In this document: positions 3,981 through 53,727 of the stretch, one piece after another | How the letters are laid out: the number at the start of each line of letters is the position of its first letter | Position numbering within the stretch: the stretch's first letter is position 1 | DNA from: Lytechinus pictus | Taxonomy: Eukaryota | Length of the DNA stretch: 64,000 nucleotides | NCBI RefSeq assembly: GCF_037042905.1 | Contig: NC_087256.1 | Span: 6,138,001-6,202,000, forward strand | Direction: 5' to 3' | Made by a program: the position numbers and the translations under genes | The notes under the pieces: generated by a model | The model's input: the letters and a program-made list of their open reading frames with translations, nothing else | Database searches by the model: none | Told to the model about the DNA's origin: nothing

Positions 3981-4144
3981 ATGGCGAAGGTCCGTGTTAT
4001 CTTCTACCTCACGGTGGGAATCTTGTGCGGTTTCGTGAAGTCTGCTTACGTCCCAGAAAAAGCGATTACCAATGACGATGTCCACCATGATCCTATCATC
4101 AGGTCCAAAAAGGAAGGAGCAACCATCGTTGGAAAGGGGGAAGG
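3981..4144 (+). CDS. HPSE: Heparanase-like exon 1 (signal peptide MAKVRVIFYLTVGILCGFVKSA plus extension)
   Basis: ATG in ccgATGg context, basic-hydrophobic-small signal pattern, and a GTAAGT donor in phase 2 that matches exon 2. Confidence 0.8.
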
Positions 4145-7100: not shown

Positions 7101-10100
7101 TATCACGATTACAAAAAGTGCTTAGAATTTCCGTACTTCGTCTAGAAATGTCAAAATTTTCAGCCCACGCTTTTCGCTCGCATTATTTGATTGTTGAAAA
7201 ATGTAAGGTAGTTGCGGTAGATACACATCTGTCTTAGGATCACAAACATTGCCCAGAATATTTAGATTTTAGGACAAAATACTTTGCACTCGCACTAATC
7301 AAAATAAGGCTTATGAGATTATTATATATTTATGTTGATTTATAAGAATAAAGCTTAGACTATTATAATAAAAGACTACCCCTTCAAAGATACAAACAAA
7401 AATCAACTTCGAGTGGCCGATCGGGAAAATGTGGCTAAAAACATTCGGCTCCCCCCCCCCCCCCATATTGGCAAAGGCTGGATCCGCCCCTGTCTACTGA
7501 TAGCTCTTGAAGGGGGGGGGTGAGTTACCCTTGAATATTATTGTTGAATATTCAGCTCAATATATTGCTTTGACCCCCATCCCTTCACACACGTTTTGTA
7601 TATCCCCGTCTACTAACAGCTCTGGGGGGGACCATTTTTTTTTAACTCAACATAATTATTGCTCTCACATCCCCCCCCCCCCGATCAGATGAATTACGCC
7701 ACTTGACGTGCGTGATTTCAATTGCAATATAGCCCCAAGATCCACTGACTATTTATTTAGCTTACACATTAAAAAAAACTGGAGAGTTGTCAAACTCAAC
7801 ACAAATATACAATAAAATAACAACAAAATAACATATTATAGAAAGAAAGTATTAAAAAAATTGAGAACTTAGTACAATAAAGATAATAAAATGTTGAAAT
7901 TTTTTACCCCCGTCTCCCACACTCGATCTATTACGTATTAGACAATGATATGAAATTATGCTGATCTGCCTTTATTTGCGCACGATATTCTTAACTAAAG
8001 TCATGATATGACCATTGATATAATGGATTATAAATTTTCATAGTTTGATCACACCATATCCACTTTAAATCCCTGGAAATTCCAGCAACAATACATGTTG
8101 TCATGGTACGACACACATTTTCTTTATTGAAAAGTATCACGACACCAACGTTGAAACTGTGCAAAGGCCTTTAATGGCGAACTCCACTGGGTTGATACAT
8201 AGCCTATGGGTGATGAACATACGTGGGCTCTGAATTACGGTCGATCACACATTATGACACACGACTTCAGTCGTGAAATTCGTGACTTTCGCTGCAAACT
8301 TTGCAACAAAAATCGCGAACTTCGCGACAAACAATTGCAAGCGTTGCAACGAAAATCGCTAACTTTAGAACTGAAATTGCAAAATTTGCAACGAAAATAG
8401 CTAACTTCACGACGACTAGAGTCGTGTGTGATTGACCGTACTTCAAAACTACCATACTTGTAATAATAGTGGCTATTGTCATGCATATTACATAATGAAC
8501 TTGTAGTAAAGGTTAAATGTAAATTTGTAATACATGTTTGTTTTTTGTTTTTAGCATTGTCAAGGATATGTCTAAATGAATTCGACTTGAGAAAACGGTA
8601 GCCAAAAATGAAATGTTAAATCAACATTTGAAAAGTTGGAGGAGTGACAATCATTCCAAAAGGTTATATCCAACTTTGCACAAAACTGAATCCAACATTA
8701 TACATATTTGGTCAAACCATTTAAAAGTGGTAAATGCAACATTTAGAAGAGGGTTATCACTATTCACTTTATACTCCAACCTTTCAAATGTTGATTTAAC
8801 ATCATTTTTTTGTGTGAGATTACTGTACTACTAGAAATGGTGGCTTTACTTGGGGTGGTTTCAATGAAGAACCCAAACACGTCCAATGGATTGTGTGATG
8901 AGCCAGGTACATTGGTATGTGGTATATGTTTTTAGGTCAAATAAGCCAGTTCGAAGTTCCACTCTGCGCATGATCAGAGGAAGGTCATTGGTACTCGAGC
9001 GACATGGTGGTTTAAAATCTAATGAGATAAGCACCAACTTTGATGTCTTGATTATTCATATATTCTTTTGTTTTTTGTGTTTCATTTACATCCACAACAA
9101 ATGCGGCGTCCACGAACGACTAGTATTTCATAGTTTGCAAAGTGCATTGTACAACATGCTATAATATGCATTCAAAGTAGAAATGCAACAAACACCTTCA
9201 TAGAATGTTCACTGGTGTGCTATTCTAGTCACCTGGTCTATTCAATTTCTTCATCCTGCTATTTAATGCATGCTTACGTAATATCTTGCTTTTAAATCTG
9301 CCTATCATAATGAACTAAATGAAAGTTATTTTTACCAAAATTGTCCATGAAGTAACTACGAACTGGTCTATTACCTTAAAAACAGTACCCGAACCGAATT
9401 GGTACATAGCTAGCCTACGACATACCCCCCCCCCAAAAAAAAATGGGGGGGGGGGGTTCCGTCCAAATTAAGGATGATTTCAGTCTGGAAAATTTGACAA
9501 GCAAAAGAAAGTTTTTATTACAAAGCGAAGCTGATTTTTAGTTAAATTTGTACTTTTTAGCATATCTACCTGATTTCTAGTGGTGTGCATATGGCCAATA
9601 ACATACGCAGCACCTCCCGCAGGTAAATCTTGGGGGTGCACCCCCTTTTCCCAGGGCCATGAGCACAGGTGAGGCAGAAGGGACTCTCTTGTCCTTAATT
9701 TCCTCTTGTGGAATAGAATATCTCTTGACAATACNNNNNNNNNNNNNNNNNNNNNNNNNNNNNNNNNNNNNNNNNNNNNNNNNNNNNNNNNNNNNNNNNN
9801 NNNNNNNNNNNNNNNNNNNNNNNNNNNNNNNNNNNNNNNNNNNNNNNNNNNNNNNNNNNNNNNNNNNNNNNNNNNNNNNNGAATGTGATGCTGAAGGACC
9901 AATGCCGGTATATTGATAGACAAGTTTACTTACTGATTTATACAAATTATGGGCATTCTTATTTAAACAAATACTGTTCTTGGAATCCCGCTGAAAGCTT
10001 GCAGGAGGCTTGTATGACATAGCAACAAATGATGTATGGAAACTGCAGTATTGTAATTTGTTTACTATAAACACGACAAAACAGGTCTCTAAGAAAAACG

Positions 10101-13100
10101 TCCATCATTGCTGCATGTGCCCTTGTATAACATTTAATAAGAAGCTAGAATTCACCCCATTCGCATCTGCCATATCATTATAACAATACATCGATGTGCT
10201 CAGCAAAAAAACGTTCACCATGCTATACCTAAATCTTTATTTCCTATATCTAATCCATTTATATTGTTTTATGTATATGACAATAATGGCTATTAGTTTG
10301 AATTATTTCGCTCATGGCATCCGTGCACTTTCCTCTACAAGCTCTCTACAGACAAGTGTTGGTTGACTACTGTACCTTCCCTCTCTTTTCCAATATAAGC
10401 ATTATTCTTTTTTTTTTCATATGAATTTTCGGTGAGCCTATATTGGTCAGCTGCTATTTACCAAAAGGGTGAGCTTGAATTTCATTTTTTGTATAAACAC
10501 AAATATATACCATGTTTTACATTGTTTTTACAGGTTGAAATATAATAAAAACAAACAAATAAATCAATTAGAAATGAAATAACGACACAATATTTCTTGT
10601 AAATTCTTCTCCCTTTTCTATTGCCTAAATTAAACAGTTTACCAATCCATTCAAAGTCGACGTCATACTTTCTTGTATCTATCGATTCTAATGAAGCGAT
10701 ACACGTTGTTGATCGTCGATTTCTTTCTGTTGGTCTCAGCGCGAAAGCAGTGGCTGTGAGAAGCATGAATGCATCTCGGGGATACGATCCAAAGTAAGTG
10801 TAAATCATATTATGTTAGGACATATGAAAGAATTGACCTCACAATTAATAATTGGAATATTTTTAATTGCCGGAGATGAAAGTCTAGGATATATGTAACG
10901 AAATATATTGCCATTTTATACCGATTTTATTTTTGTATATTGTAAACCCCGACTAGTGAGGAGAGCTTCAAAACAGAAACTAGTTTTTCTTTTAGTCATC
11001 CTCAGGCACTAGTCGGTGGTAATTTCTTCCTCTTGTTTATATTCTTGTTGTCTTTTGCCTGGAAACAAAATAAATAAAATAAATGAAGTTCGTGAAAGCA
11101 TTTATATGTACATCGTCATGAATATTCATCAGGTGGGATGATGACATATTCCCACTTCCCCCTTTCCTTATGTTACTACATGAAGCTATAATCATTTCAT
11201 ATTTTCTTACATGTGTGCATGATATGACTTCCTTGTAAGACAATACATATCAGCAATGAACTGATGAATATCGTATGCATTACATCAATTGTCAGTCCAT
11301 TTTGTTCACTCTTGGTGGACAAAATCTGAAGAATATAATATCGTATGACAAAATACAAACAGATAAGTGGGGATATGACATCATCATCTTGCTCATAATA
11401 TATTCATAAAGACATGCACAGAACTGTTTCACCGAAATAATGCAAAGCTTTAAACTACCATAACTTTGTTATTCCTTGTCCGAGTTTAATGAAATTTTCA
11501 GTATTTTGTTTGTCTGATTTTACTTGGTCGATTTAAATCACACATTTACAAGCCTATAGTACTTCTTTAAGGCCCCTCTTTGTGGATTTCCATGAAAAAT
11601 CTCTCGTTGTTAATCACGAACCCTTTGATGTATATCAAATCAGTACATTCTCATCAATGTCGGTAAATAGGGCTCACGTTCGCATTGCGAAACCACGGGT
11701 AACTTTATACGACAAAATGGTACTGATTTTACTTCAAAATCAGACTTTAACCCCTTTTACATTTTGAAAAAAAAAGCTTGACTTTTTTTATTCATTTTCA
11801 TCGTAACAGCTCGGTCATCCTCCAAACATTGTTACGTGGCCTTGCTCCTTCTATTTTACGTGTCGGAGGAAGGGCGGGAGACGAGGTAATATTTGCTCTG
11901 AATGGTTCTTCCAATTCCATTCCTCATCCCTGGATAAATATAAATCATTTTCTGACAGGTAAGCTCCCGTGATCGCAGCCCATGAATTTATCTTCCCATT
12001 TAAATTTGTTTTGGAGACACATTTTTGTACTTCTTTCGCTCCCTGACAATTGTCCGGCCACTTAAAATCCACTTTTATTATCCACATATCCGGCTCTCCA
12101 GAAGGGTTCCGTGACAATTGCTCCGCCGCAAATTCCACACATTATTCGAATGACCAGTCTTTACCCTGGGTTTAACACTATACCCTATCCTAAACCTAAC
12201 CCTATACCTTAGATGAAATTGAAGGGATGCTCCGGGCTGAGAATATTTATATCTAGATAAAAAGAGTAAAATTCACAGAGCAAAATGCTGAAAATTTCAT
12301 CAAAATCGGATAACAAATTACGAAGTTATTGAATTTTAAAGTTTAGCAGTATTTTGTGAAAACAGTTATATGCACGTCGTCATGAATATTCATTAGGTTG
12401 GCCGACGATGTAACATCCCACATTCCTTTTTCTTATTTTTACATGAAATCACAATTTTTTGTCATCTTTTCATACAAGTGTAAATGATGTGTCTCCATTA
12501 TGATGAAATAAGTTGCAGCAATAAATAACTGATGCACTTAATCAGTTGTTAATCCAATTGTTTTAGTTTTTGGGAAAAAAATCGAATACACCGAATTTCA
12601 TATGATACAATACAAAAGAACAAGTGGGATTGACATCATCAGCCCACCTAATGAATATTCATAAAGACATGCCTAGAACTGTTTCACCGGAATAATGCAA
12701 ATCTTTAACATTCAATAACTTTGTTATTTGTTATCCGATTTTAATGAAATTTTCAGCATTTTGCTCTGCGACATTTTCCTCTATTTATTGAAGTATAAAT
12801 ATCTTCAGCCTGGAGCATCCCTTTAAGCCCGTAGCAAATGTCGTTTCACCTCCAGAAGAAGCGCGAATTTGAATTTGGTAGGCCTTTCGCAGAAGGGATT
12901 TTTCGAGAAAAAAATACCGTCACACTGCAAAACTCTGCGATGTCAACCGGTGTACACGAAGGACCACACCGGACACTTTACTCAACTGTTAAACTGTTAG
13001 TGTCAGTTCAACACCTATGGGTGTTATTGTAACACGCTGTAACGTTTACACTCTGGTGTTATGTTCAATCCTGAGGGGGTAAATTGAACACATTGGGATG

Positions 13101-16100
13101 TGGTCCTTAATAGACACCAACCGGTGTCAGCCTTAACACCCTTCATCATTAAAATTGTTGAATGGTAGGATACAAGTATTAGAACCTGTCGTCTAGACCT
13201 ACAGACTAATTAAAAAAAACACCCAATGTAATCTTCACTAGGTAATCTAAGGGTGTACAAGTAATAACACATAATTATCCATTTGCAGGTGAACATTGGA
13301 AGAGTCTTAATGAATTTTGCTTAAAAAGTGGGGCGGATCTTGCATTTACTTTGAACGTGGCTTTGAGGAAAGGCGGTGCATGGGACCCGACTAACGCTAA
13401 GGAACTCCTAGACTTCAATGCGAACCTTGGATATCGTGTCATCTGGGAATTGGGAAACGGTAAGATAGATGGATGTTGTAAGATGGCTGTGATAAAAACC
13501 ATAAAGGAATATAATGATAATGGTCATGGTGGTGTTTGGTGTGGTGTGAAGGTGGCAGTGGCGGCAGCAGTGGCAGCGGTGGTGATGTCGTTGTTGCTGT
13601 TGGTAATGATGGTGGTCTTAATTGGAACGATGAAATTGAAAATGTGGATGGTGCTTTGTAGAGTTGTGATGATGATGTGGTGTTTTGTGTGGTGGAGTTA
13701 GATGTGGTGGTAGTGTTCAGGGTACTGTGATGGATTATATGTGTTGATATTAGTTGTGGTGATAATGAGTGCAGCCGGAGTGCAGTGTTTGGTGGCGTTT
13801 CATGCGTCAATGATGGTGGAGGTGTACGTGATGCTGTGTTGGTCGGACCTGTAGTTTTTGGTTGATGTTATTTGTGGTAGTGCTGGTGCTGATGTAAGTT
13901 GTGTTCGTGATAGTGGGAGGATGTTATATTTGTATTACTGATAACATGCACATTTTGGGGACTTTGATTTTCAGCGGCATGCATGGACGTGTGATGTAAG
14001 CAGCTGAGTATCTGCCATAATCTCCATCTCCGTCTGTGTACACGTGTGTACTTGGTTTTACACTTGGCTATTATTGTCCAGCATTAGAATGTTGAGGGAT
14101 GTGAAAGTGCGTGCATGTGGGTGAGCGTGTGTGTGAGGGTGTTTGAGGGTGTGTGTGTGAGTGTGAAGGGTACGTATGATGGTGTGTGGCTGTGAGTGCG
14201 CGAGGGTGAGTGTGTGTGCGTAAAGGGGTGAGCGCGCGAGGGTGTGTATGTGCTGTGTGAGGTGTGTTTACTGAAGAGAAAGAGAGATTTAAACAAAAAA
14301 TCTGCTCTCGATTTGAAACCATGAAATAGACGCATGCGTATTATGGTTTATTTTTTGCTCGAGTGGTCACGATAAGCAATATATTTTGTTCATTTTCGAG
14401 AGAAAGTCTTTGAAGTCCAACTGAACTGTCATTTTCTCGAAATTTATGACAAATAAATACAAATATTTTTGATAGTTCACTGTTTTATTGTAAATTGTCC
14501 ATTGTAATAAATTGGAGCGTTTTGTTTGAAATTCTGCTAGAATCGAGTTCATAACGTCACTACTATTGGAATTTATGTTTGACCAGAACCGGCCCTGTTC
14601 AAGAAAAACTACCACCTCAGGATACCAGCTCGACAGTTAGCCAAGGACTTCAACACGCTAAGGAATATCTTATCAAAGGACCGGTACCGGTTTAGCAACG
14701 AGTTAGTGGGACCGGATATGGACCACCTTCCCATCGCACATTGCGGCAATACAAAGACAGTCACATCAGAAGACTTTCAAAACAATACAGACTATTTGAG
14801 AAGGTTTTTTCCCCTCTTCTTACATTAAGCTTGATTAGTATTTAGTTTACATCTGGGTCCCATAACACAAAGGTTAGCGATTAATCGTACGCTTGCTTTT
14901 TACGATTGATAATGCATTGTATTCATTGCTATCAATCACAAAAAGAAACGTTCTACGATGATCGCTAAGCTTTGTGTAAAGCCCGACGCACACTATGCGA
15001 TTTGTTGCGATCCGAATTTCAAAGAAATTTAAACACTAGTAACATTTGTTATGAACATTCCAACCAATTTATATTGGCGATCAGAGTTCAGAATAGTGGT
15101 AGGACTACTGAAATAAAAATTCAGTGTAGTTCGAGCCTCCTTGGAGGAATAAAAGCAAATTCAAATCCAAATCGTAATGACGTCATCATCGGCTGCGACT
15201 TGAAGTCGATTTGGACTTCACTCCGACCACAGGGCTTGCCGCAAAGCAAAATCATAATTTTGTTATTCCTAACATTATGCTGAACTTCAAATGAAATCAT
15301 TTTACTTCTTGAAACTTTCACATTTAATGCAAAATGTGATTTATAAATATATCGCGTCGCATCGGATCGCATAGTGTGCTGTGGGCTTTACGGGCCCCTA
15401 ATATAATATATATATAATATATAGTTGGAATTACGATCTAGAGTCCGTTATAATTACCTGCTGATCCCCATTATGCCTATTTTGCCATGGTGATTCCGGG
15501 GGGGGGGGGTCATTATAGCTGAAAGTGTAGTTTATCATTTAAATCTTTTACAGGCCTGCCCGAAAAATGGTAAAAGAAAATGATCACCGACTCCAATCTT
15601 AAAGATCATTTCCTTTCCAGGAGAGGTACACCTATAGAAAGTTATAATCAGATTTCCTTAAAACGGGAATTTGAAAATTATTTTTCTCTCTCTCTGAAGC
15701 AACTGTAATGTCTGATGATATTTTGATTAATGAATTGGCCATCCAATTACACTTCGTAATAAAGGTAAATTTGTTACTGTTACATATTGAATAGGCTATT
15801 GAAGGTAAATCTCCTCAACCATAAATCTAATGAATTTTCTTAGCTTGGTTTCTTTTTATTTTGTTATGTTCTTAGAAGAGGTGTTAAGACACACCTTGTA
15901 TAATCATATGGTAATTATACACTGTAAAAAATGAAGTGCTAATTTAGCACCTGCAGTGTTTGTATAGTGACTGCACTACGAGTGTTGATATTCTAGTTCA
16001 AATTTGAACTAGAAAATCAGCACTTGTAGTGCAGTCATTATACAAACACTGCAGGTGCTAAATTAGCACTTTATTTTTTTAGTGTATAAGCACCCATCTT

Positions 16101-19100
16101 GATTGATTAAAAAAATGTTACTTTCAAGTTAAAAATCGAATTTGATATGGCATTTGGATATCAGTGTGTCCCTGCTTGAAACAAGTGGGGCTTCACACAA
16201 GACTATAGCACAAAAACAACTTATTTCATTTTTAAAAAATATAATAGGGGTAATTCTTTGCACTTTTCTAAGTCAAGGACTCAAGGCTGCACATTCAGTG
16301 ATTCAGAGCGTTTTCCTCGACATAATGCAAACTAGATAACAGATATGATGGCTCTACTGGGAGTAACCAGCTCTGAGAGTATATGATCAGAAATAAGAGA
16401 TGATATCGGGAAAGAAAGTTCGGTCCCGTTTATTGCAAGCTGTTTATTCCGTTATGTCAGTTTATATGTTTAAGGAATTATGGAATAGCCTCCCTGAAAA
16501 CATCAAACAGTGCTTGACCTCTGAAACTTTCAAACAATACCTTAAAACATTTCTCTTCAATTCTTCTTGATTTCTGTTATAATTTCCTAAAAAGCGCCTT
16601 GAGCACTCTACAGAGTGGATTTGGTGCGATATAAGTCTAATTATTATTATTATTATTATGGGACAAGAGGCTTGCCATATCTCTTTCCATAACGATGCAC
16701 ATACCCGGGATTGGGCGGGAGGGGGGGGGGGTATGCACAATAAAGAACATCTTCTCTTTCGAATTTGTAAATCTTGATTACTTTTGATCTGTTGATACAG
16801 GTTCTTAAAGGATGCTGGAGATGCCATCAATGCAACTACAGTTCACTTCTACAACCTAAACAGAAAATCAGAAACATTATCCGTCGACAATTTCACCAAC
16901 CCAGACACGGTCAATTTGATGAGATGCGAGCTCAAGGAATTCCGAAAACTCATGAAAGATGTCAAACCGACAGGCGCGAGATGGTTAGGCGAGACCTCCT
17001 CCGTGGCTGCCGGTGGCCTGAGAGGAGTATCAAATCGATATGTAGCTGGATTTATGTAAGCAGTTTTTTATCGCCCCTCCCTATTTATCGACTCCAGCCT
17101 TTACTTTGAGGATTGTAACCAGTAAATGGCTGATTATTTCCCCTTCGTACGTAAGGCCCTTCTGTATCGGTCATACACACGATGAAAATTAAACTTTTGA
17201 ACGCGATCCAAATTTATATATTTTTTCGGGGAGGGGGTGCGTTAACTCTTAGCAAATTATGTGAAATTTGAATCTTCCTTTTTGCAGGTTATAAAAGCCA
17301 TGTAATTCTCCCTTTATTTGCTGACATATGTGGTTTATTTAATATCTTAAAAAAACATAAGAAATTGCAAAAGGAAGAACACATCGAAACTTGCATCACA
17401 GGAGATAGACCCCGATAGGTTAAAAGAGCTAGATCGACAAATGCACATTTTCATGAGAGTATTCTAAATCATTGATCATGATGATTGGTCAATCGGTGAT
17501 CACATGAAAAAAAAGTTTCTTTACATGGCAGACATTGAGTATGCGCAGCTATTCCCAAGGGAGAATATAGTGAGAATATTCCTAGCTCTCGCCCATTCTC
17601 ATACAGTCCGAAACCATTCTGAAATCTTATATTACGAGTAAACGTAGCAAGCGAGAGCAGAAATAAACTTTATTTATTTATTTTGTTATCTATTTATTTA
17701 TTTATTTATTTTGGCTTCCAGTCAGAATTGCATTATTGAAGTTCAAAGTATAATGATTTTATCAAAATTATTATTCACACAAATAATATAATTGGCTTGA
17801 ATCCATGGGTAGCTCATATTCTAGTTTACTTTATACACCCCATTGGGGAAAAAAAATATTGGAATAAACCCGATCGGTTTATCCCGGTGTTGTAACGATG
17901 TGCCTGAGGGCAAACCGGGACAGTCGCGGAACTGTGTCGCTGCTGGAGCAAGAGTTTGTTGCGAGGTTACAGCGAGGCGAGGTTATACCGGGTAAGTTTA
18001 TTGCGGGTCCGATCATTCACAATAAGGGTAACACCAATACAGTCTCAGGACAGTCCCGGGACTGTAGCTGTGTTTGAGGCCAGTGTGAAAACCGTATCAG
18101 TCTCTCAATCTAAATAAAGGAACAACTGAACGCGCTGTCGAAAGGGCCGATTTTGTCAAGGTGGTCACCGGCCTTCTCTAGCGCAATGTCATCACTGTAT
18201 AATAATACAAGTGAATAATTTGCCCATCTCTTTCAGTATACTTCACAACTTGGGAGTTGCGGCCGAGATGGGGATATCTGTATTCATATACTGGGACCTG
18301 ACCAATGGACCTTATTCATTGCTCGATGTTGATGATTATACACCGACACCGGTAAGCATTCAAAAATTTGTCCAATACTGCAACGAAACTCCAGAAATGG
18401 TATACCCGAAACATTCACATTCTCACATCCATTATGTAAAAAAGAACATTTTTGTCAAGATACTTCACATACTTTTATGTCTTTCTTAAGGAAAGTTTGT
18501 AACGAAGGATGTGTCATTAGAAACTGAATATTTGATTGCAAATCAATGTCGGCTTTAAAATATAAACGAAAACGCGAATCATGATTAAAAACGTGATTAC
18601 AAAACGTTGATGTAATGGGAAACAAAGGGTTTGCTCAATGTTCTCCATTCCCGGTCGTAAACGTAAACGTCTTTCAAATCATGATTCGGAGGAAAATTTA
18701 ATTTCATGGCGTTCCTAAACGGATGTTTTAAAGTTTACATGAATTTTCGTTTACAGTAGGAATAAATCGGCCTAAACGGCGTCATCTCCCCCAAAACGTA
18801 GAGATTCTTAGGCAAAATAATGAAAGGTGCACACAATTTTAAAGTAATCTACTCTAATTATTACCGACCCTTGAAGTGATCTCCTGGCTCTTTTAATCTG
18901 AACTGAACACTAACTTTCACACAACTTAATAGGCCTATAATTACATGCGAATAATATTGAATTGTGATTTTTTAGTATGCTGATCACATTGAACTTTTAT
19001 GAGTTGCACCATGTTTATCCGTGTTTATGACACATTGTGTTATCTTAATCTTCAACATTGTCTTTGAATTAACTTAATGTCATGAGTAAACTTAAATTCA

Positions 19101-22100
19101 CATTGTCATGTTATATTCTCACTAATGTATGTAATACAATAATTTTGCCTTACCTAACCTATTGCAATGTAACATGGGGAAGCACAGCATCTTATTTATT
19201 ACAAATAAATATGTTTTTAATACAACAACATGCAATAAGAATAATCACTAATTCAACATATCTTGCCCATACGGACCTACTGATTTGGAAGCTAACAATT
19301 TTAAATATATATGATTTACATTGCTGTCTTGTTCCTTGTTTTATGTTTTCTTATTCCAAAGGGGCTTTACCGGATATTTTAATGATTTTGTTTTCACTTT
19401 TAACTCTATGCACGCTGATGTTGCAATCTTGCACATTTGTACATTTAGTAATGTAAATATGTATTCAAGAAGAAACATTAATGACTCATCTCCCAAGATA
19501 TATACAGTTGAGGCCAGAAGTTTAAATACACCCAGGAAATTCAAAGAAAAGTTGACACTTGCCAAACATAAAATTTACTGTATCTTATAAAATATTTTTG
19601 CTATCATGACGAATTTGATATCAAACAAATGAGTATGTCATGCCCCTTGATCATATTGATTTGTCATCAGAAGCTGAAAAATATTTAGTTGTCATTTTTA
19701 CCCCAAAATCTTCATATTTTAGACAAATTAAAAATAAAAACTTGACAAAAAACATTTCATATTTGTGTTAGTTACTTCTCAACACAAACATTTCAGATTA
19801 CACTTTTTTGTTCAGTGGTGACATATCATGATAGAAAATGTAATATAAATCATAGATATGACATTTATATATTTTTTATGAAACGATGTTTGAAAATATA
19901 ATAACAAACAATAGAATACATTTGGCAAGAATATTACTTTTTTTTTTCTTCAAAGAAAATTCCACCTGAAATATACTTTAATCCAAACGGCATCCCAAAT
20001 CATGTGAAAGAACTTGATATGCTCTTTCATTTGATACCAAATTCGTCACTATGGTAGTATTTATATTTTTGCAGATATAGTACATTTTACGATGTTTGGC
20101 AAGCGAACAATTTTCACTGAATTCCATGAGTGTATGTAAACTTTTGGCCTCAACTGTATATAATTTTCTAAAACTGTTTTTAGATATGAAGGACCTGTCA
20201 TCTGGAATGATTTGCCATCAAACAATAAAACTTGGTCCTAACTATTGATTTTTAAACATAAATGTAAATCATATCTTGCAAGTTTTCTATTAATTTATAA
20301 ATAAAATGGAGCCTCTGTTTTTTTTTTCTTTTGTTTGTTAATGTTTTTGCTCTTTGTTTGTTGTTTGATCACGGTTATTTTGTTTTATTGATTTGTTTTT
20401 AACCAATGCGCACAACTAAGGGGATTGGTCTCGATAGGTCTTTGGCCTTTGCCAATCCTCTACATGCACTGCATGTTGGTTTTACCCTTTTCTTTTGCCA
20501 TTATATAGATTGTTTTAATGTATTGATTGTTCTTTTTTATTGCTTATGTATTGTCTGTTTTATTGTACCCTTTTAATAGATGTGAATAAAGTGAATTTGA
20601 ATTGGAATCATACATTGATCTGGAAAATAACAGTTGATTTATTTCTGAAGAATCCTTTTACAGGCGTTTGATTTTGATTACTTTGTTCAGTCTTGATTTG
20701 AATTAAAATGGATTGTGTGGTTTTTTTCCTTTCAAAAGCTGTATTGGATATGTTTTCTGCATAAGCGGCTTACTGGTACTCATGTTTTATCTGTATCGTA
20801 CACCGAAGACGAAAAAGTTACACAGACAGTGAAAAGTGCCTCTTATGTCCACGTTTTTGCTCATTGTACCAAAGTTTCGTAAGTATTCTTTTATCATTCT
20901 CTCTGATTCACTCTCCTCGCAATTATTCATGAAACCCAAATATAAATTGATTATTAATGATACCCTTTTTCTACTTAAACTCTATATTTTTGTTTGAATA
21001 AAGAATCTTCTTATTTTTACATAGGAATAAAGATTTTTTACATTCATTTTGAAATATATATGAATTTTCTAGTGTTCACCACTTACTACCCCTGGACCAC
21101 TTACAATCGCTGGCAACTTTTCATTAGTGGTCCACCACGTTTACAGCTCATTGGGAAATCGAAATGCGTGTCTTTGTTAAATTAACATTGATTACATGTT
21201 ATTATTCACAATATTTATGGCTCCAGAGTATTTCTACAAACTAAATGTTAAATAATTTTTCCTCAGCTAAAAATTCATTATTATTATACACTTAAAACGA
21301 CAAAAACATCTGTTACCTATACTCATCTTCGTTAATCAACTAACCACACTTGAAATTGTTACAATATTTTTGTACTTCGATTCTTTTTTTTTATCTCACC
21401 GATTTCTATAATACAGTCTGTTGTATCCTGTCGGTGCTGTTACGATCATAGCAATTAACCTGCACAACGATACTGATGCATCTTTATTCTTAACTGAGAA
21501 TTTGATGAATAAGAATATAGACGAGTATCTATTGACTGCACCAGAAGGAAACCTTACCAGCAGGTAGATAATTGTCTTATTTTATTATAATCTATGTAAA
21601 AGGAAATATTTCCTTAGTTATCACGATTTGTTAAAGGTGAGAATAGTCTTGAAGAAGTTCCCTGAATTAACACACATAATTGAATCAATTGACGTAAATA
21701 ATTGTATCGTGTGTCTTGATACATATTTATGTGTGTCACTTACTATTCTCTCGTGTGTAACTCTTTAGTCTCTCGTGGGAGACAACGTAACGGGTCATTT
21801 TATCAGCAAGAGATCATTTATATGGTATGAAGGTATATGCTCTGGGAAAGTATGTTATGTCACTGAAGTTTAACTTTACTTCATATTCGTTAAAATGACT
21901 GGGTGACGAAGTTAATCTGTTACTTTACTCTGCCCCTCTCAGTACTGGGTGACGAAAGTGATCTCCTACTTTACTCAACCCTCACTGAACTGGGTGACGA
22001 AAGCGATCTATTACTTTACTCAACCCTCAATGTACTGGGTAATGCAAACGATCTCTTGCTTTACTCAACATTTCGTTGAACTGGATGACGAAAGCAAGTT

Positions 22101-23475
22101 GGTTACTTTACTCAGCCTCTCTTTTTATTGGGTGACAAAAGCAATATTTTACTTTACTTAGCACCTCTGTGTACTTTGTGACGAATGTGATCCGTTACTG
22201 TACTCAACCTCTACTTGTACTCGGGGACGAAAGTGATCTGTTACTTTACTAAACCTCTCTCTGTACTGGGTGGCGAAAGCGATCTGTTTCTTTACTCGAT
22301 CTCTCTCTGTACTGGGTGACGAAAGCGATCTATCACTTTACTCAACCTCTCTCTGTATTGGGTGACGAAAGTGATCTGTTGCTTAACTCAGCCTCTCTCT
22401 TTACTGAGTGACGAAAGCGATATGTTACTTTACTCAACACCTCATTGTACTGGGTGACGAAAGTGATCTGTTACTTTACTCAACCTCTCTCTGTACTGGG
22501 TGACGAAAGCGATCTATCACTTTACTCAACCTCCCTCTGTACTGGGTGACGAAAGTGATCTGTTGCTTTACTCAACCCCTCTCTGTACTGGGTGACGAAA
22601 GCGATCTTTTACTTTACTCAACCTCCCTCTGTACTGGGTGACGAAAGCGATCTTTTACTTTACTCAACCTCTCTCTTTACTGAGTGACGAAAGCGATATG
22701 TTACTTTACTCACACCTCATTGTAATGGGTGACGAAAGTGATCTGTTACTTTACTCAACCTCTCTCTGTACTGGGTGACGAAAGCGATCTTTTACTTTAC
22801 TCAACCTCCCTCTGTACTGGGTGACGAAAGTGATATGTTGCTTTACTCAACCCCTCTCTGTACTGGGTGACGAAAGCGATCTTTTACTTTACTCAACACC
22901 TCATTGTACTGGGTGACGAAATTGATCTGTTACTTTACTCAACCTCTCTCTGTACTGGGTGACGAAATTGATCTTTTACTTTACTCAACCTCCCTCTGTA
23001 CTGGGTGACGAAAGTGATCTGTTGCTTTACTCAACCCCTCTCTGTACTGGGTGACGAAAGCGATCTTTTTACTCAGCCTCTCTCTGTAAAGGTTATGTGC
23101 ACATGTTCAATAAATAAAATTAGTTTCGCATCATTTCATTTATTTCTACAATTTCATATTCCATGGTGTTTTTTTAAAACAAAATGTGCCAAATACCAAT
23201 CAAATTACGCATTGAAATAAGTTTAGGCATGTTATCTCTTTTATTTTGATATATGTATATAAATCTTTTCTTATCTGACTGTTTTATTTTTACTTAGTAA
23301 TATACTTCTCAACGGCTACAAGTTGGAAATGAAGAATTCAACCCATTTTCCAGATATCAACCCACGCCCTCTGCCGATAGGATATCCGATAGTTCTTCCT
23401 CCACGGACGTATGGGTTCTACGTCATTAAAGACGCTGATGCTCTAGTTTGTCGGAAACATGAGACCAAATACTGA
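3981..23475 (+). CDS. HPSE: Heparanase-like glycoside hydrolase family 79 protein, 10 coding exons: 3981-4144, 10638-10793, 11810-11958, 13289-13459, 14587-14803, 16801-17055, 18237-18351, 20739-20878, 21417-21563, 23298-23475 (1692 nt, 563 aa)
   Basis: All nine introns are GT-AG and their phases chain without a break (2,2,1,1,2,2,0,2,2). The translation carries GH79/HPSE motifs in order: VVDRRFLSV, LLRGLAPSILRVGG, WDPTNA, WELGNEP (acid/base Glu), LVGPD, WLGETSS (nucleophile Glu), YVAGF, YW..LHKRLTG, VFAHCT, EYLLT, ILLNG, YGFYVI..A..C. It has an N-terminal signal peptide. The symbol denotes the family; this may be a divergent paralog. Confidence 0.93.
6300..7492 (-). mobile_element. Non-autonomous element ending …gctggatccgcccctg, with gcgcgcttcgcgctcgc subrepeats
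   Basis: Reverse-complement relative of the element at about 61662-62540; left boundary approximate. Confidence 0.65.
8238..8438. mobile_element. MITE with TA flanks (cggtcgatcacac…gtgtgattgaccg)
   Basis: TIRs, TA flanks, internal ttgcaacgaaaat repeats. Confidence 0.7.
9001..9357 (+). repeat. Interspersed repeat, inverted copy at about 60525-60897
   Basis: Long colinear identity, e.g. ctattctagtcacctggtctattcaatttcttcatcctgctat. Confidence 0.85.
9735..9880. other. Assembly gap (N run)
   Basis: N bases. Confidence 1.
10638..10793 (+). CDS. HPSE: Heparanase-like exon 2 (…VSIDSNEAIHVVDRRFLSVGLS…)
   Basis: cag acceptor and gtaagt donor; resembles HPSE PLHLVSPSFLSVTID. Confidence 0.9.
11060..11570. 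mobile_element. Degenerate T2/Kolobok-like MITE
   Basis: Colinear with the interior of 12223-12822; ends …ctttaa; left boundary approximate. Confidence 0.65.
11810..11958 (+). CDS. HPSE: Heparanase-like exon 3 (LQTLLRGLAPSILRVGGRAGDEVIF)
   Basis: Resembles HPSE [25 protein letters not shown]; cag/gtaagc boundaries. Confidence 0.93.
12105..12850. mobile_element. GG…CC-terminated MITE with 8-bp TSD tccagaag (Merlin-like), interrupted by a T2 MITE
   Basis: tccagaag at 12097-12104 and 12851-12858; same family as 30852-31053 and 60904-61310. Confidence 0.75.
12223..12822. mobile_element. T2/Kolobok-like MITE (agggatgctcc…ggagcatccct; ttga/ttaa flanks)
   Basis: AGG termini, TTAA-type TSD, long TIRs. 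Confidence 0.85.
13289..13459 (+). CDS. HPSE: Heparanase-like exon 4 (…AFTLNVALRKGGAWDPTNAKELLDF…IWELGN)
   Basis: GH79 motif; the catalytic Glu codon is split across the phase-1 intron. Confidence 0.95.
13510..13925. repeat. Degenerate (GGT/GAT)n simple repeat
   Basis: Low-complexity tract after exon 4. Confidence 0.8.
14100..14270. repeat. Degenerate (GT)n microsatellite
   Basis: gtgtgt runs. Confidence 0.85.
14587..14803 (+). CDS. HPSE: Heparanase-like exon 5 (EPALF…QLAKDFNTLRNIL…LVGPD…DYLR)
   Basis: Completes GNEP; LVGPD motif; weak donor ag|gttttt. Confidence 0.88.
14855..15398. mobile_element. Harbinger-like MITE (gggtcccataacacaaag…ctttgtgt/acgggcccc) carrying a nested MITE at 14980-15387
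   Basis: The outer TIR is restored when the inner element (agcccgacgcacactatgcgat…atcgcatagtgtgctgtgggct; TAA/TTA flanks) is removed. Confidence 0.8.
15920..16084. mobile_element. Near-perfect 165-bp palindromic MITE with CACT…AGTG ends (CACTA/EnSpm-like), TA flanks
   Basis: Arms pair to the centre ttctagttcaaatttgaactagaa. Confidence 0.85.
16470..16658 (+). mobile_element. CR1/L2-type LINE 3' end (LWNSLPENIKQ…FKQYLKTFLF) with (ATT)n tail
   Basis: Typical ORF2 C-terminus, stem-loop and microsatellite tail. Confidence 0.8.
16801..17055 (+). CDS. HPSE: Heparanase-like exon 6 (FLKDAGDAINATTVHFY…WLGETSSVAAGG…YVAGF)
   Basis: Nucleophile Glu codon at 16991-16993; cag/gtaagc boundaries. Confidence 0.95.
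18237..18351 (+). CDS. HPSE: Heparanase-like exon 7 (ILHNLGVAAEMGISVFIYWDLTNGPYSLLD…PTP)
   Basis: Aligns to HPSE WLDKLGLSARMGIEVVMRQ…GNYHLVD…PLP. Confidence 0.92.
19100..20600 (+). mobile_element. Decayed CR1-like LINE 3' portion, split by a Tc1 MITE
   Basis: ILPYLTYCNVTWGS…AIRIITNSTYLAHT, resuming after 20156 with FRYEGPVIWNDLP. Confidence 0.75.
19505..20156. mobile_element. Tc1/mariner non-autonomous element, TA TSD
   Basis: TIR cagttgaggccagaagtttaaatacac / gtgtatgtaaacttttggcctcaactg, flanked by TA. Confidence 0.9.
20739..20878 (+). CDS. HPSE: Heparanase-like exon 8 (LYWICFLHKRLTGTHVL…VFAHCT)
   Basis: Aligns to HPSE DYWLSLLFKKLVGTKVL…YLHCT; aag acceptor, gtaagt donor. Confidence 0.9.
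21417..21563 (+). CDS. HPSE: Heparanase-like exon 9 (YPVGAVTIIAINLHN…IDEYLLTAPEGNLTS)
   Basis: Aligns to the HPSE C-terminal beta-sandwich; cag/gtagat boundaries. Confidence 0.92.
21897..23088. repeat. 46-bp minisatellite, about 26 copies, in heparanase intron 9
   Basis: Unit tgggtgacgaaagYgatctgttactttactcaacctctctctgtac; period measured from 22451 to 22497. Confidence 0.95.
23298..23475 (+). CDS. HPSE: Heparanase-like exon 10 (NILLNGYKLEM…LPPRTYGFYVIKDADALVCRKHETKY*)
   Basis: Aligns to HPSE VQLNG…LPAFSYSFFVIRNAKVAACI; TGA at 23473-23475. Confidence 0.93.
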
Positions 23476-53595: not shown

Positions 53596-53727
53596 NNNNN
53601 NNNNNNNNNNNNNNNNNNNNNNNNNNNNNNNNNNNNNNNNNNNNNNNNNNNNNNNNNNNNNNNNNNNNNNNNNNNNNNNNNNNNNNNNNNNNNNNNNNNN
53701 NNNNNNNNNNNNNNNNNNNNNNNNNNN
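53596..53727. other. Assembly gap (N run)
   Basis: N bases. Confidence 1.

What the first reader, a model, noticed from the sequence alone, without database searches (positions are those of the whole stretch)
10638..18351. Heparanase-fold enzyme with both catalytic glutamates but a rebuilt -1 sugar pocket
Seen: the acid/base (WELGNEP) and nucleophile (WLGETSS) motifs are intact and the ORF is undisrupted. By eye against human HPSE, positions lining the -1 glucuronate site change together. D62 becomes S and N64 becomes K (FLSVTIDAN to FLSVGLSAK). T97 becomes R (GGT to GGR, codon 11871-11873). Y348/G349 become A/A (SSAYGGG to SSVAAGG). R382/Q383 become Y/W (VMRQ to FIYW), and WLDKLG becomes ILHNLG. 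H296, Y298 and Y391 appear retained. Established: D62, T97, G349/G350 and Y391 contact GlcA in HPSE structures, and GGT, YGGG and RQ are strongly conserved in GH79. Inference: this is a secreted, probably active GH79 with a different substrate. New Arg/Lys residues in the pocket could suit a sulfated or non-uronic sugar, such as the sulfated fucans/galactans or oversulfated GAGs of echinoderms.
Basis: partly seen in the sequence, partly recalled or inferred. Interest (0 to 1): 0.78.

Follow-up and report, generated by a model that had tools for sequence, protein, structure and literature searches.

The report
Sea-urchin heparanase with remodelled sugar pocket
This is an expressed, intact sea-urchin gene for a secreted heparanase-family (GH79) enzyme that keeps the whole catalytic and carboxylate-binding machinery but, like all its sea-urchin relatives and no other animal homologue examined, has replaced a set of otherwise nearly invariant residues around the sugar-binding pocket, so its substrate may differ from ordinary heparan sulfate.

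Summary
The window (Lytechinus pictus, chromosome C12) holds a 10-exon gene on the + strand (3981-23475). Its 563-aa product is identical to RefSeq "heparanase-like". HMMER alignments to human heparanase show D62S, N64K, T97R, Y348A, G349A, W365I, D367H, K368N, R382Y and Q383W. N224, E225, H296, Y298, E343, G350 and Y391 are kept.

Compared with 106 other family members (choanoflagellate to mammal), some changes are not unusual: positions 62, 64, 348 and 349 vary widely. The following changes are confined to one echinoid clade (Lytechinus x2 paralogs, Strongylocentrotus, Diadema): T97R/K, R382Y, Q383W (otherwise only in two annelid proteins), D367H/N, K368N and W365I/L.

The gene is spliced and expressed in RNA-seq. 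pN/pS is 0.51 against the L. variegatus ortholog, significantly below 1. The genome has no canonical heparanase.

Best reading: an active secreted retaining beta-glucuronidase whose O3/O4 pocket wall and basic heparan-binding patches were rebuilt. The substrate is probably a glucuronate-containing glycan that may not be classical heparan sulfate. This is a new variant of a known family, uncharacterised biochemically and of moderate interest.

The parts
3981..4144 (+). Exon 1: start codon, signal-peptide-like N-terminus (MAKVRVIFYLTVGILCGFVKS...) and the start of a disordered N-terminal region
   Evidence: Splice model. Identical to RefSeq protein P0110. AF2 gives helix 2-16, then pLDDT below 50 for residues 17-56.
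10638..10793 (+). Exon 2: beta-1 strand FLSVGLSAK. S89 (codon 10738-10740) is at human D62. K91 (10744-10746) is at N64.
11810..11958 (+). Exon 3: beta-2 strand RVGGRAGDE. R128 (11871-11873) is at human T97. It is followed by a short 20-residue loop where vertebrates have the 6-kDa linker.
13289..13459 (+). Exon 4: ends in WELGN plus the first base of the acid/base Glu codon (N213 at 13456-13458)
   Evidence: An RNA loose end at 14586 reads ...TGGGAATTGGGAAAC, which is the end of exon 4.
14587..14803 (+). Exon 5: completes E214 (the acid/base, human E225) and holds the K219/K220 pair. It also holds the clade-specific insertion (about 262-282, IAHCGNTKTVTSEDFQNNTDY) where human heparanase has the basic QPRRKTAK patch.
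   Evidence: RNA-seq depth and the 14803/16801 junction are supported by 61 reads.
16801..17055 (+). Exon 6: H301 and Y303 (human H296, Y298), nucleophile E350 (16991-16993, human E343), and A355/A356/G357 (human Y348/G349/G350)
   Evidence: RNA-seq coverage. A355T is polymorphic at 17006.
18237..18351 (+). Exon 7: IILHNLG (human WLDKLG), beta-8 VFIYW with Y389/W390 (18289-18294, human R382/Q383), and Y397 (18313-18315, human Y391)
   Evidence: The 17055/18237 junction is supported by 82 reads.
20739..20878 (+). Exon 8: PLYW (canonical PDYW) and the start of the C-terminal beta-sandwich
   Evidence: An RNA contig loose end at 18351 continues with CTGTATTGGATATG, which is the start of exon 8.
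21417..21563 (+). Exon 9: beta-sandwich domain
23298..23475 (+). Exon 10: C-terminal strand that completes the beta-sandwich, conserved Cys556, and stop codon TGA at 23473-23475

Best explanation
The gene encodes a secreted, single-chain, catalytically competent retaining glycosidase of family GH79. It belongs to a subfamily found so far only in sea urchins (Echinoidea).

Proposed mechanism (inferred from the family). The reaction is a double displacement, with E214 as acid/base and E350 as nucleophile. N213, H301 and Y303 support catalysis. Y397 and the backbone at G357 hold the C6 carboxylate of a beta-glucuronate in subsite -1.

What differs from canonical heparanase.
1. The wall that reads O3/O4 of that sugar is rebuilt: D62/T97/Q383 in human heparanase become S89/R128/W390.
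2. A neighbouring charged network is replaced by neutral or aromatic residues: W365, D367, K368, R382 and D403 become I, H, N, Y and L.
3. The basic heparan-binding patches are absent. There is no HBD1, and an acidic or neutral 15-residue insertion sits at HBD2.

The enzyme therefore most likely still cleaves a beta-glucuronidic bond in a glycosaminoglycan-like glycan. Its substrate preference is probably shifted away from the highly sulfated heparan sulfate that vertebrate heparanase prefers. The substrate itself is not determined.
For: Shown here.
- Gene model and identity to the RefSeq protein.
- GH79 Pfam hit at 85.8 bits against a cut-off of 23.1.
- Confident AF2 model (pLDDT 86.4) whose best matches are human proheparanase (E 4e-54), leech hyaluronidase and mature heparanase (TMt 0.91).
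- N224, E225, H296, Y298, E343, G350 and Y391 equivalents are kept in 9 of 9 clade members.
- T97R/K, R382Y, K368N, D367H/N and W365I/L occur in 9 of 9 clade members and in essentially none of 106 other homologues. Q383W also occurs in 9 of 9 clade members and otherwise in only two Owenia proteins.
- The clade has 100/100 support and the longest internal branch in the tree, 0.81.
- A profile search finds only echinoid members, then scores drop from 971 to 397 bits.
- RNA-seq shows stranded coverage and GT..AG junctions with 61 and 82 reads.
- pN/pS is 0.51 (p=0.005 against 1) for this gene and 0.37 for its paralog. None of the 46 differences from L. variegatus touches a pocket residue.

Literature.
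- D62 and the T97 backbone bind the 3-OH. D62 and Y391 bind the 4-OH. Q383 hydrogen-bonds D62 and Y391 (PMC10785800).
- N224, E225, E343, G350 and Y391 are absolutely conserved for accommodating GlcA at -1 in GH79 (PMC9500389).
Against: No activity was measured and no coordinates could be inspected, so the roles assigned to R128, W390 and the charged network are inference. L. pictus has no canonical heparanase, so this clade may simply be the urchin's heparan-sulfate enzyme with a compensated pocket. The K231/K232 pair is retained. pN/pS of 0.4-0.5 is fairly high, which is compatible with relaxed constraint. Positions 62, 64, 348 and 349 also vary in homologues assumed to be ordinary heparanases, so part of the 'rebuilding' is normal family variation. 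A355 is itself polymorphic (A/T) in the RNA reads.
Confidence: 0.5

Rival explanations
1. It is the sea urchin's ordinary heparanase. The enzyme still cleaves heparan sulfate at GlcA-GlcN bonds, and the substitutions are a compensated, functionally neutral re-packing. R/K at 97 and W at 383 would take over the hydrogen bonding and packing of D62 and Q383. Tyr/His/Asn/Leu would replace a buried salt-bridge network.
For: No canonical heparanase is found in the genome with five different queries. The other two GH79 loci are even less canonical: they lack Y391, and one has a frameshift. All uronate-binding and catalytic residues are kept. The S. purpuratus clade member is annotated 'heparanase'. 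The K231/K232 pair is kept. Sea urchins make heparan sulfate (my own knowledge, not tested here).
Against: The two basic heparin-binding patches and R303 are lost. D62, which binds O3, is lost (PMC10785800). The very long stem branch followed by conservation is the usual mark of a functional shift. Animals can lack heparanase altogether: insects and nematodes do, according to PMC12406646. The genome therefore does not need one.
Confidence: 0.28
2. It is a non-catalytic glycan-binding pseudoenzyme, or a gene under relaxed constraint on the way to decay, analogous to vertebrate heparanase-2.
For: pN/pS is 0.51, which is fairly high. A basic residue at position 97 is otherwise seen only in fish heparanase-2. 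Nonsynonymous polymorphisms and an in-frame indel are present in the RNA reads.
Against: Heparanase-2 has lost the nucleophile (Gly), H296 and Y391 (PMC12406646). Here all seven catalytic and uronate residues are invariant in 9 of 9 clade members spanning Diadema to Lytechinus. The ORF is intact, the splice sites are canonical, and the gene is expressed. pN/pS is significantly below 1.
Confidence: 0.1
3. One reading: the pocket now accepts a non-uronic sulfated sugar, so the enzyme degrades echinoderm sulfated fucans or galactans (for example egg jelly).
For: There is a new Arg/Lys at positions 97 and 64, and the O3/O4 ligands D62 and Q383 are lost.
Against: Y391, G350 and N224, the residues that anchor the glucuronate carboxylate and O2, are strictly kept in the whole clade (PMC9500389). 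K at position 64 is present in only 4 of 9 clade members. Every GH79 structure returned by the fold search is a beta-glucuronidase of some kind: heparanases, leech hyaluronidase and Acidobacterium beta-glucuronidase.
Confidence: 0.05

Closest known systems
Human heparanase HPSE1 (GH79; PDB 5E8M mature, 5LA4 pro-form)
   Same: Same fold (Foldseek E 4e-54, TMt 0.84-0.91, 31-34% identity). Same NEP acid/base and GETS nucleophile motifs. H296, Y298, G350, Y391 and K231/K232 are the same. The C-terminal beta-sandwich is also present.
   Different: The substitutions are D62S, T97R, Q383W, R382Y, D367H, K368N, W365I, D403L, Y299N, Y348A and G349A. There is no 6-kDa linker to excise, only a 20-residue loop as in other invertebrate homologues. 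There are no basic HBD1 or HBD2 patches. A 15-residue insertion sits at the HBD2 position.
Leech hyaluronoglucuronidase (GH79; PDB 7EYO)
   Same: It is the second-best structural match (E 7e-47, TMt 0.86, rmsd 2.7, 28% identity). It is an invertebrate, single-chain member of the heparanase family. It shows that the family can switch to another glucuronate-containing glycosaminoglycan.
   Different: It is a different lineage. I could not print its residue-level alignment, so I did not compare pocket residues. No evidence here links the urchin enzyme to hyaluronan.
Vertebrate heparanase-2 (HPSE2, pseudoenzyme)
   Same: It is a divergent heparanase paralog. A fish HPSE2 also has a basic residue (K) at position 97 and changes at D367, K368 and Q383.
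   Different: HPSE2 lacks the nucleophile (Gly), H296 and Y391 and keeps a lid helix (PMC12406646). The urchin protein keeps all catalytic residues and has no lid.
Bacterial exo-beta-glucuronidase AcGlcA79A and Burkholderia heparanase (GH79)
   Same: Same fold (E about 1e-26, 15-18% identity). Both share the absolutely conserved N224/E225/E343/G350/Y391 set (PMC9500389).
   Different: They carry Glu at position 62 and Asn at position 97 (PMC9500389), and His at 383 in AcGH79 (PMC10785800). The acidic or polar O3/O4 ligands are therefore kept there but not in the urchin clade.
Other echinoderm GH79 genes (asteroid 'heparanase-like' P0061/P0178; 'clade B' P0008/P0114 and the L. pictus C2 locus; crinoid P0011)
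   Same: Same phylum, short linker, same exon-level organisation, about 33-36% identity.
   Different: The crinoid and asteroid canonical-like proteins keep T97 and R382. They also keep Q383 (Asterias has Ala there) and Y391. Clade B keeps K/Q-Q at 382-383 but lacks Y391. None has the echinoid R/K97 + Y382 + W383 signature.

Membership tests
Glycoside hydrolase family 79 (Pfam PF03662 Glyco_hydro_79n) | Sequence match to the family profile above the curated cut-off | tested here: met
   85.8 bits against a cut-off of 23.1, residues 107-377
Glycoside hydrolase family 79 (Pfam PF03662 Glyco_hydro_79n) | (beta/alpha)8 barrel plus C-terminal beta-sandwich fold | tested here: met
   AF2 pLDDT 86.4, pTM 0.86. 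The top 33 Foldseek PDB hits are all GH79 structures.
Glycoside hydrolase family 79 (Pfam PF03662 Glyco_hydro_79n) | Acid/base Glu in an N-E-P motif after beta-4 and nucleophile Glu after beta-7 | tested here: met
   N213-E214-P215 and E350 align with human N224-E225 and E343. They are invariant in the clade.
Glycoside hydrolase family 79 (Pfam PF03662 Glyco_hydro_79n) | Glucuronate carboxylate ligands (Tyr391 side chain, Gly350 backbone) | tested here: met
   Y397 and G357 are present in 9 of 9 clade members. The role is taken from PMC9500389.
Glycoside hydrolase family 79 (Pfam PF03662 Glyco_hydro_79n) | Measured beta-glucuronidase activity | not testable with these tools
   Needs recombinant protein
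Canonical heparanase (HPSE1-type heparan sulfate endo-beta-glucuronidase) | O3/O4-binding network Asp(Glu)62 - Thr(Ser/Asn)97 - Gln383 | tested here: not met
   S89, R128 and W390. Among 106 other homologues, Q383 is Q in 101 and T97 is T/S/N in 96.
Canonical heparanase (HPSE1-type heparan sulfate endo-beta-glucuronidase) | Near-invariant W365-x-D367-K368 / R382 / D403 residues | tested here: not met
   I, H, N, Y and L here. These positions are 87-97% conserved in the rest of the family.
Canonical heparanase (HPSE1-type heparan sulfate endo-beta-glucuronidase) | Basic heparin-binding patches (HBD1 K158-D171, HBD2 Q270-K280) and R303 | tested here: not met
   No basic cluster at either place. 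There is an insertion IAHCGNTKTVTSEDFQNNTDY at HBD2. The R303 position is not conserved in the clade. Only the K231/K232 pair is kept. The patch definitions come from my own knowledge of the heparanase literature.
Canonical heparanase (HPSE1-type heparan sulfate endo-beta-glucuronidase) | Pro-enzyme with a 6-kDa linker removed by proteolysis | tested here: not met
   Only about 20 residues lie between the GGR strand and the next helix. The same short loop is seen in cnidarian, hemichordate and other echinoderm homologues, so the long linker is a chordate trait.
Canonical heparanase (HPSE1-type heparan sulfate endo-beta-glucuronidase) | Cleavage of heparan sulfate | not testable with these tools
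   Needs an enzyme assay
Heparanase-2 type pseudoenzyme | Loss of the catalytic nucleophile and vestigial active site | tested here: not met
   E350 is present. Fish HPSE2 (P0194) has G at that column, Q at H296 and T at Y391. PMC12406646 reports Gly381 in human HPSE2c.

The most novel reading that the evidence does not exclude
The echinoid clade is a GH79 enzyme with a new specificity. It would be a glucuronidase whose -1 subsite, with Arg/Lys at position 97 and Trp at 383 in place of Asp62/Gln383, recognises a glucuronate that is sulfated or substituted at O3 (or O2) in an echinoderm-specific glycosaminoglycan. That would add a third animal GH79 activity beside heparanase and leech hyaluronidase.
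Probability: 0.25. Interest if true: 0.7.

Novelty: new variant of a known kind. Interest (0 to 1): 0.48.

Why it matters
Heparanase is a major drug target, and its pocket residues are treated as fixed across GH79. This clade is a natural experiment. For roughly the age of the crown sea urchins (my estimate, over 200 million years), the catalytic residues and the carboxylate anchor were kept. Over the same span Asp62, Gln383, Arg382 and the W-x-D-K helix motif were all exchanged and a cationic residue appeared at position 97. If the enzyme still cuts heparan sulfate, those 'invariant' residues are dispensable and can be compensated. If it cuts something else, it is a new glycosaminoglycan-degrading tool and a lead on echinoderm matrix or egg-coat biology. 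L. pictus is a genetically tractable urchin, so both outcomes can be tested. The S. purpuratus clade member's current annotation as plain 'heparanase' should be treated with caution.

Tried and rejected
1. Single short exons searched against PDB sequences (exon 2 and exon 7 ORFs) gave only chance hits. Longer pieces of the spliced protein were needed.
2. The first MAFFT run timed out and was repeated with lighter settings.
3. HPSE2-like pseudoenzyme reading: rejected, because the nucleophile and all uronate ligands are kept (PMC12406646).
4. Decaying gene: rejected (intact ORF, canonical splice sites, expression, pN/pS significantly below 1).
5. 'Short linker means a special, constitutively active form': rejected as a distinguishing feature, because all non-chordate homologues examined have the short loop.
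6. Treating D62S, N64K, Y348A and G349A as diagnostic: rejected, because those columns vary widely elsewhere and A355 is polymorphic A/T in L. pictus itself.
7. Resolving whether the clade is the echinoid ortholog of HPSE1 or an echinoderm-specific duplicate: the quick tree joined it to asteroid genes at 94% SH-aLRT, but the careful tree leaves it in an unresolved bilaterian polytomy.
8. An attempt to print the residue alignment to leech hyaluronidase 7EYO failed, because human chains ranked first.
9. One paper search was badly specified and uninformative. Two proper searches found no paper that characterises a sea-urchin heparanase.
10. The search of earlier findings by words returned nothing.
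11. Deep-pair dN/dS (against S. purpuratus or Diadema) was not computed, because synonymous sites are expected to be saturated at 45-63% protein identity.

Full report
WHAT IS THERE. The window is G000:C12:6138001-6202000 of a sea-urchin assembly. On the + strand I built a 10-exon gene: 3981-4144, 10638-10793, 11810-11958, 13289-13459, 14587-14803, 16801-17055, 18237-18351, 20739-20878, 21417-21563 and 23298-23475. Every intron is GT..AG. The 563-aa translation is 100% identical to P0110, NCBI XP_063963363 'heparanase-like [Lytechinus pictus]'. Exon 1 (signal-peptide-like start) and exons 8-10 (beta-sandwich) lie outside it.

OBSERVATION CHECK. HMMER alignments of the spliced protein to human heparanase chains reproduce every statement.
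- FLSVGLSAK aligns with FLSVTIDAN, giving D62S and N64K.
- RVGGRAG aligns with RFGGTKT, giving T97R.
- WELGNEP is intact but split by intron 4.
- TVHFYN aligns with TWHHYY, so H296 and Y298 are kept.
- WLGETSSVAAGG aligns with WLGETSSAYGGG, giving Y348A and G349A, with G350 kept.
- IILHNLG aligns with MWLDKLG.
- VFIYW aligns with VVMRQ, giving R382Y and Q383W.
- Y391 is kept, with a one-residue shorter loop before it.
Pfam PF03662 scores 85.8 bits. An AlphaFold2 model built on a 56-sequence alignment is confident (pLDDT 86.4, pTM 0.86). It places S89, R128, E214, H301/Y303, E350 and W390 at or just after the C-terminal ends of strands beta-1, 2, 4, 6, 7 and 8, which is the catalytic face. Foldseek returns human proheparanase (E 4e-54), leech hyaluronidase 7EYO, mature heparanase (TMt 0.91) and bacterial GH79 enzymes.

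IS IT MORE THAN ORDINARY FAMILY VARIATION? I collected homologues with an exhaustive representative search seeded on exon 6 and two word-indexed searches. I then tabulated the key columns in 115 proteins, from a choanoflagellate and sponges to mammals.
- N224, E225, H296, Y298, E343, G350 and Y391 are essentially universal, and they are kept in all nine members of the urchin clade.
- Positions 62, 64, 348 and 349 are not diagnostic. Outside the clade, position 62 is D in 69 proteins and G/T/E/S/P/K in the rest. Position 64 is mostly S or G. Position 348 is Y/W/S/F. Position 349 is G in 78 and H/D/P/N/R in the others.
- The remaining changes are striking. R382 is R in 103 of 106 (K in 3). Q383 is Q in 101, and W only in two proteins of the annelid Owenia fusiformis. 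K368 is K in 102. D367 is D in 102. W365 is W in 92. T97 is T/S/N in 96, and Lys occurs only in a fish heparanase-2. The urchin clade has Y, W, N, H/N, I/L and R/K at these positions in 9 of 9.
- A blind scan for columns at least 85% conserved elsewhere but never matched in the clade returns only nine positions: Y299N, W365I/L, D367H/N, K368N, V380F, R382Y, Q383W, D403L and a Y-to-F change at residue 449. All but one lie in the segment from the end of beta-6 to the PDYW motif that follows beta-8.

WHO HAS IT. The clade comprises the window gene and its L. variegatus ortholog (P0151, 91% identical), a second Lytechinus paralog pair (P0109/P0154), the S. purpuratus protein annotated 'heparanase' (P0140, in the cluster of P0001), and Diadema setosum and D. 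antillarum proteins. A profile of the clade scores these at 971-1053 bits, and the next hit (a coral heparanase) at 397 bits. No starfish, crinoid, sea-cucumber or hemichordate member appears. In a careful ML tree the clade has 100/100 support and sits on the longest internal branch (0.81 substitutions per site). Its position among bilaterian heparanases is unresolved. A quicker tree had linked it with asteroid genes. The S. purpuratus protein groups weakly with the P0109 paralog.

THE GENOME'S GH79 REPERTOIRE. Five six-frame searches of the window's own genome were run: the Pfam model, P0109, Patiria P0114, crinoid canonical P0011 and Acanthaster P0061. They find the same four loci only.
- The window gene.
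- P0109 at C12:6108369-6124817 on the opposite strand, head-to-head about 17 kb upstream.
- A locus at C12:6096959-6103265.
- A locus at C2:22296714-22302345.
The last two belong to another divergent echinoderm group ('clade B', with Patiria and Acanthaster proteins). They read GGA, W-I/L-S/T-E-S-G and V-Q/S-Q, and they lack Y391. The C12 copy has a frameshift inside the nucleophile exon. L. pictus therefore has no gene with the canonical pocket.

IS IT ALIVE? Three stranded RNA-seq runs of the same species cover exons 5, 6 and 7 at depth 10-45, with only about 6% of each run read. Introns are near zero apart from repeats. The junctions 14803/16801 and 17055/18237 (GT..AG) are supported by 61 and 82 reads. 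Loose ends match the end of exon 4 and the start of exon 8. A clade-member transcript with an uninterrupted CDS is assembled in two further public runs. Against the L. variegatus ortholog (locus L029) all ten exons align, exons 2-10 without gaps. Nucleotide identity over exons 2-10 is 94.8% and protein identity is 91%. By the Nei-Gojobori method dN is 0.044, dS is 0.087 and pN/pS is 0.51, which is below 1 with p=0.005. None of the 46 replacements touches a catalytic or signature residue. The paralog pair gives 0.37. The gene is therefore constrained but not tightly. The RNA reads also show segregating variants: A355T at the Y348-equivalent position, C266S in the inserted loop, and V402F or an in-frame 3-nt deletion.

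HOW IT PROBABLY WORKS. In heparanase-inhibitor structures, the 3-OH of a glucuronate-configured ligand bonds Asp62 and the backbone N of Thr97. The 4-OH bonds Tyr391 and Asp62. Gln383 hydrogen-bonds both Asp62 and Tyr391 (PMC10785800). A review of GH79 structures states that Asn224, Glu225, Glu343, Gly350 and Tyr391 are absolutely conserved for accommodating GlcA at -1, whereas positions 62, 97 and 349 change conservatively between human and bacterial enzymes (D/E, T/N, G/Q) (PMC9500389). The urchin clade keeps the first set completely and breaks the second non-conservatively (S or G, R or K, small residues). I therefore infer a retaining enzyme that still docks a uronate carboxylate but reads the O3/O4 side of the sugar with a cationic side chain and a Trp platform. 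The co-ordinated loss of two acids and two bases (D367, D403, K368, R382) next to it looks like replacement of a charged network by neutral packing. That point, and the precise role of R128, are inference, because I had no access to model coordinates. The cleft is also less heparin-like. The N-terminal basic patch of the 50-kDa subunit and the QPRRKTAK patch are absent. The latter is replaced by a low-confidence 15-residue loop carrying Asp/Glu, a Cys and a glycosylation sequon. R303 is not conserved in the clade, and only the K231/K232 pair remains. The short inter-strand loop in place of the vertebrate 6-kDa linker is shared with cnidarian, hemichordate and other echinoderm homologues, so it is not special.

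VERDICT ON THE INTERPRETATION. 'Secreted, probably active GH79 with a changed pocket' is supported. 'Different substrate' is plausible but untested, and it competes with the reading that this is simply the urchin's heparanase with a compensated pocket, given that no canonical gene exists in the genome. 'Non-uronic sugar' is unlikely, because the carboxylate ligands are kept. The heparanase-2 type of inactivation is excluded (PMC12406646).

NOVELTY. The gene is already annotated ('heparanase-like'; 'heparanase' for the S. purpuratus clade member), and the fold and family are known. In the open literature searched I found no description of the clade-wide signature and no biochemical work on any sea-urchin heparanase. 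I rate it a new variant of a known kind, of moderate interest.

Noticed in passing
outside the window: G000:C12:6108369-6124817 (minus strand), loci L033/L034: A second intact clade member (P0109, 63% identical) lies head-to-head with the window gene, about 17 kb from its first exon. It has its own L. variegatus ortholog (P0154), and pN/pS between the two is 0.37. The duplication predates the split of the two Lytechinus species.
   Followed up: partly
outside the window: G000:C12:6096959-6103265 (loci L025/L027): A third GH79 locus lies next to the pair. It belongs to a different, Y391-less echinoderm group. Its nucleophile exon changes frame between ...VHKY and SKIWLTESG, so it is probably a pseudogene or an assembly error.
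   Followed up: partly
outside the window: G000:C2:22296714-22302345 (loci L024/L026): The fourth GH79 locus appears intact. It reads GGA, WISESG and IVQQ and has no Tyr at the Y391 position. It groups loosely with the starfish 'heparanase-like' proteins P0008 and P0114. Its function is also unknown.
   Followed up: partly
window 17006, 14742, 18328-18332: RNA reads show common coding variants: G>A at 17006 (A355T, at the Y348-equivalent pocket-rim position, in about half of reads), T>A at 14742 (C266S in the inserted loop), and G>T at 18328 or a 3-nt in-frame deletion at 18330 (V402 region).
   Followed up: partly
window 21898-23088: A 46-bp minisatellite of 26 copies (83% matches) lies in intron 9 of the gene.
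   Followed up: no
window 14850-14900 and 16465-16730: Short intronic stretches have very high read depth on both strands, and many loose ends lead into unrelated sequence. This is the behaviour of dispersed repeats or transposon fragments, not of gene exons.
   Followed up: no
proteins P0015 and P0037 (Owenia fusiformis): These are the only homologues outside the urchin clade with Trp at the Q383 position. They pair it with Glu at position 62 and keep T97 and R382. This looks like an independent, partial version of the same change.
   Followed up: no
locus L032:10839-12347 (L. variegatus): An intron of the L. variegatus paralog gene holds an opposite-strand ORF of 467 aa with DDE transposase domains (PF13359, PF04827).
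   Followed up: no
window 9735-9880, 41107-41617, 53596-53727: These are runs of N (assembly gaps or masked sequence). The first lies in intron 1 of the gene. None touches an exon, and they were left as they are.
   Followed up: no
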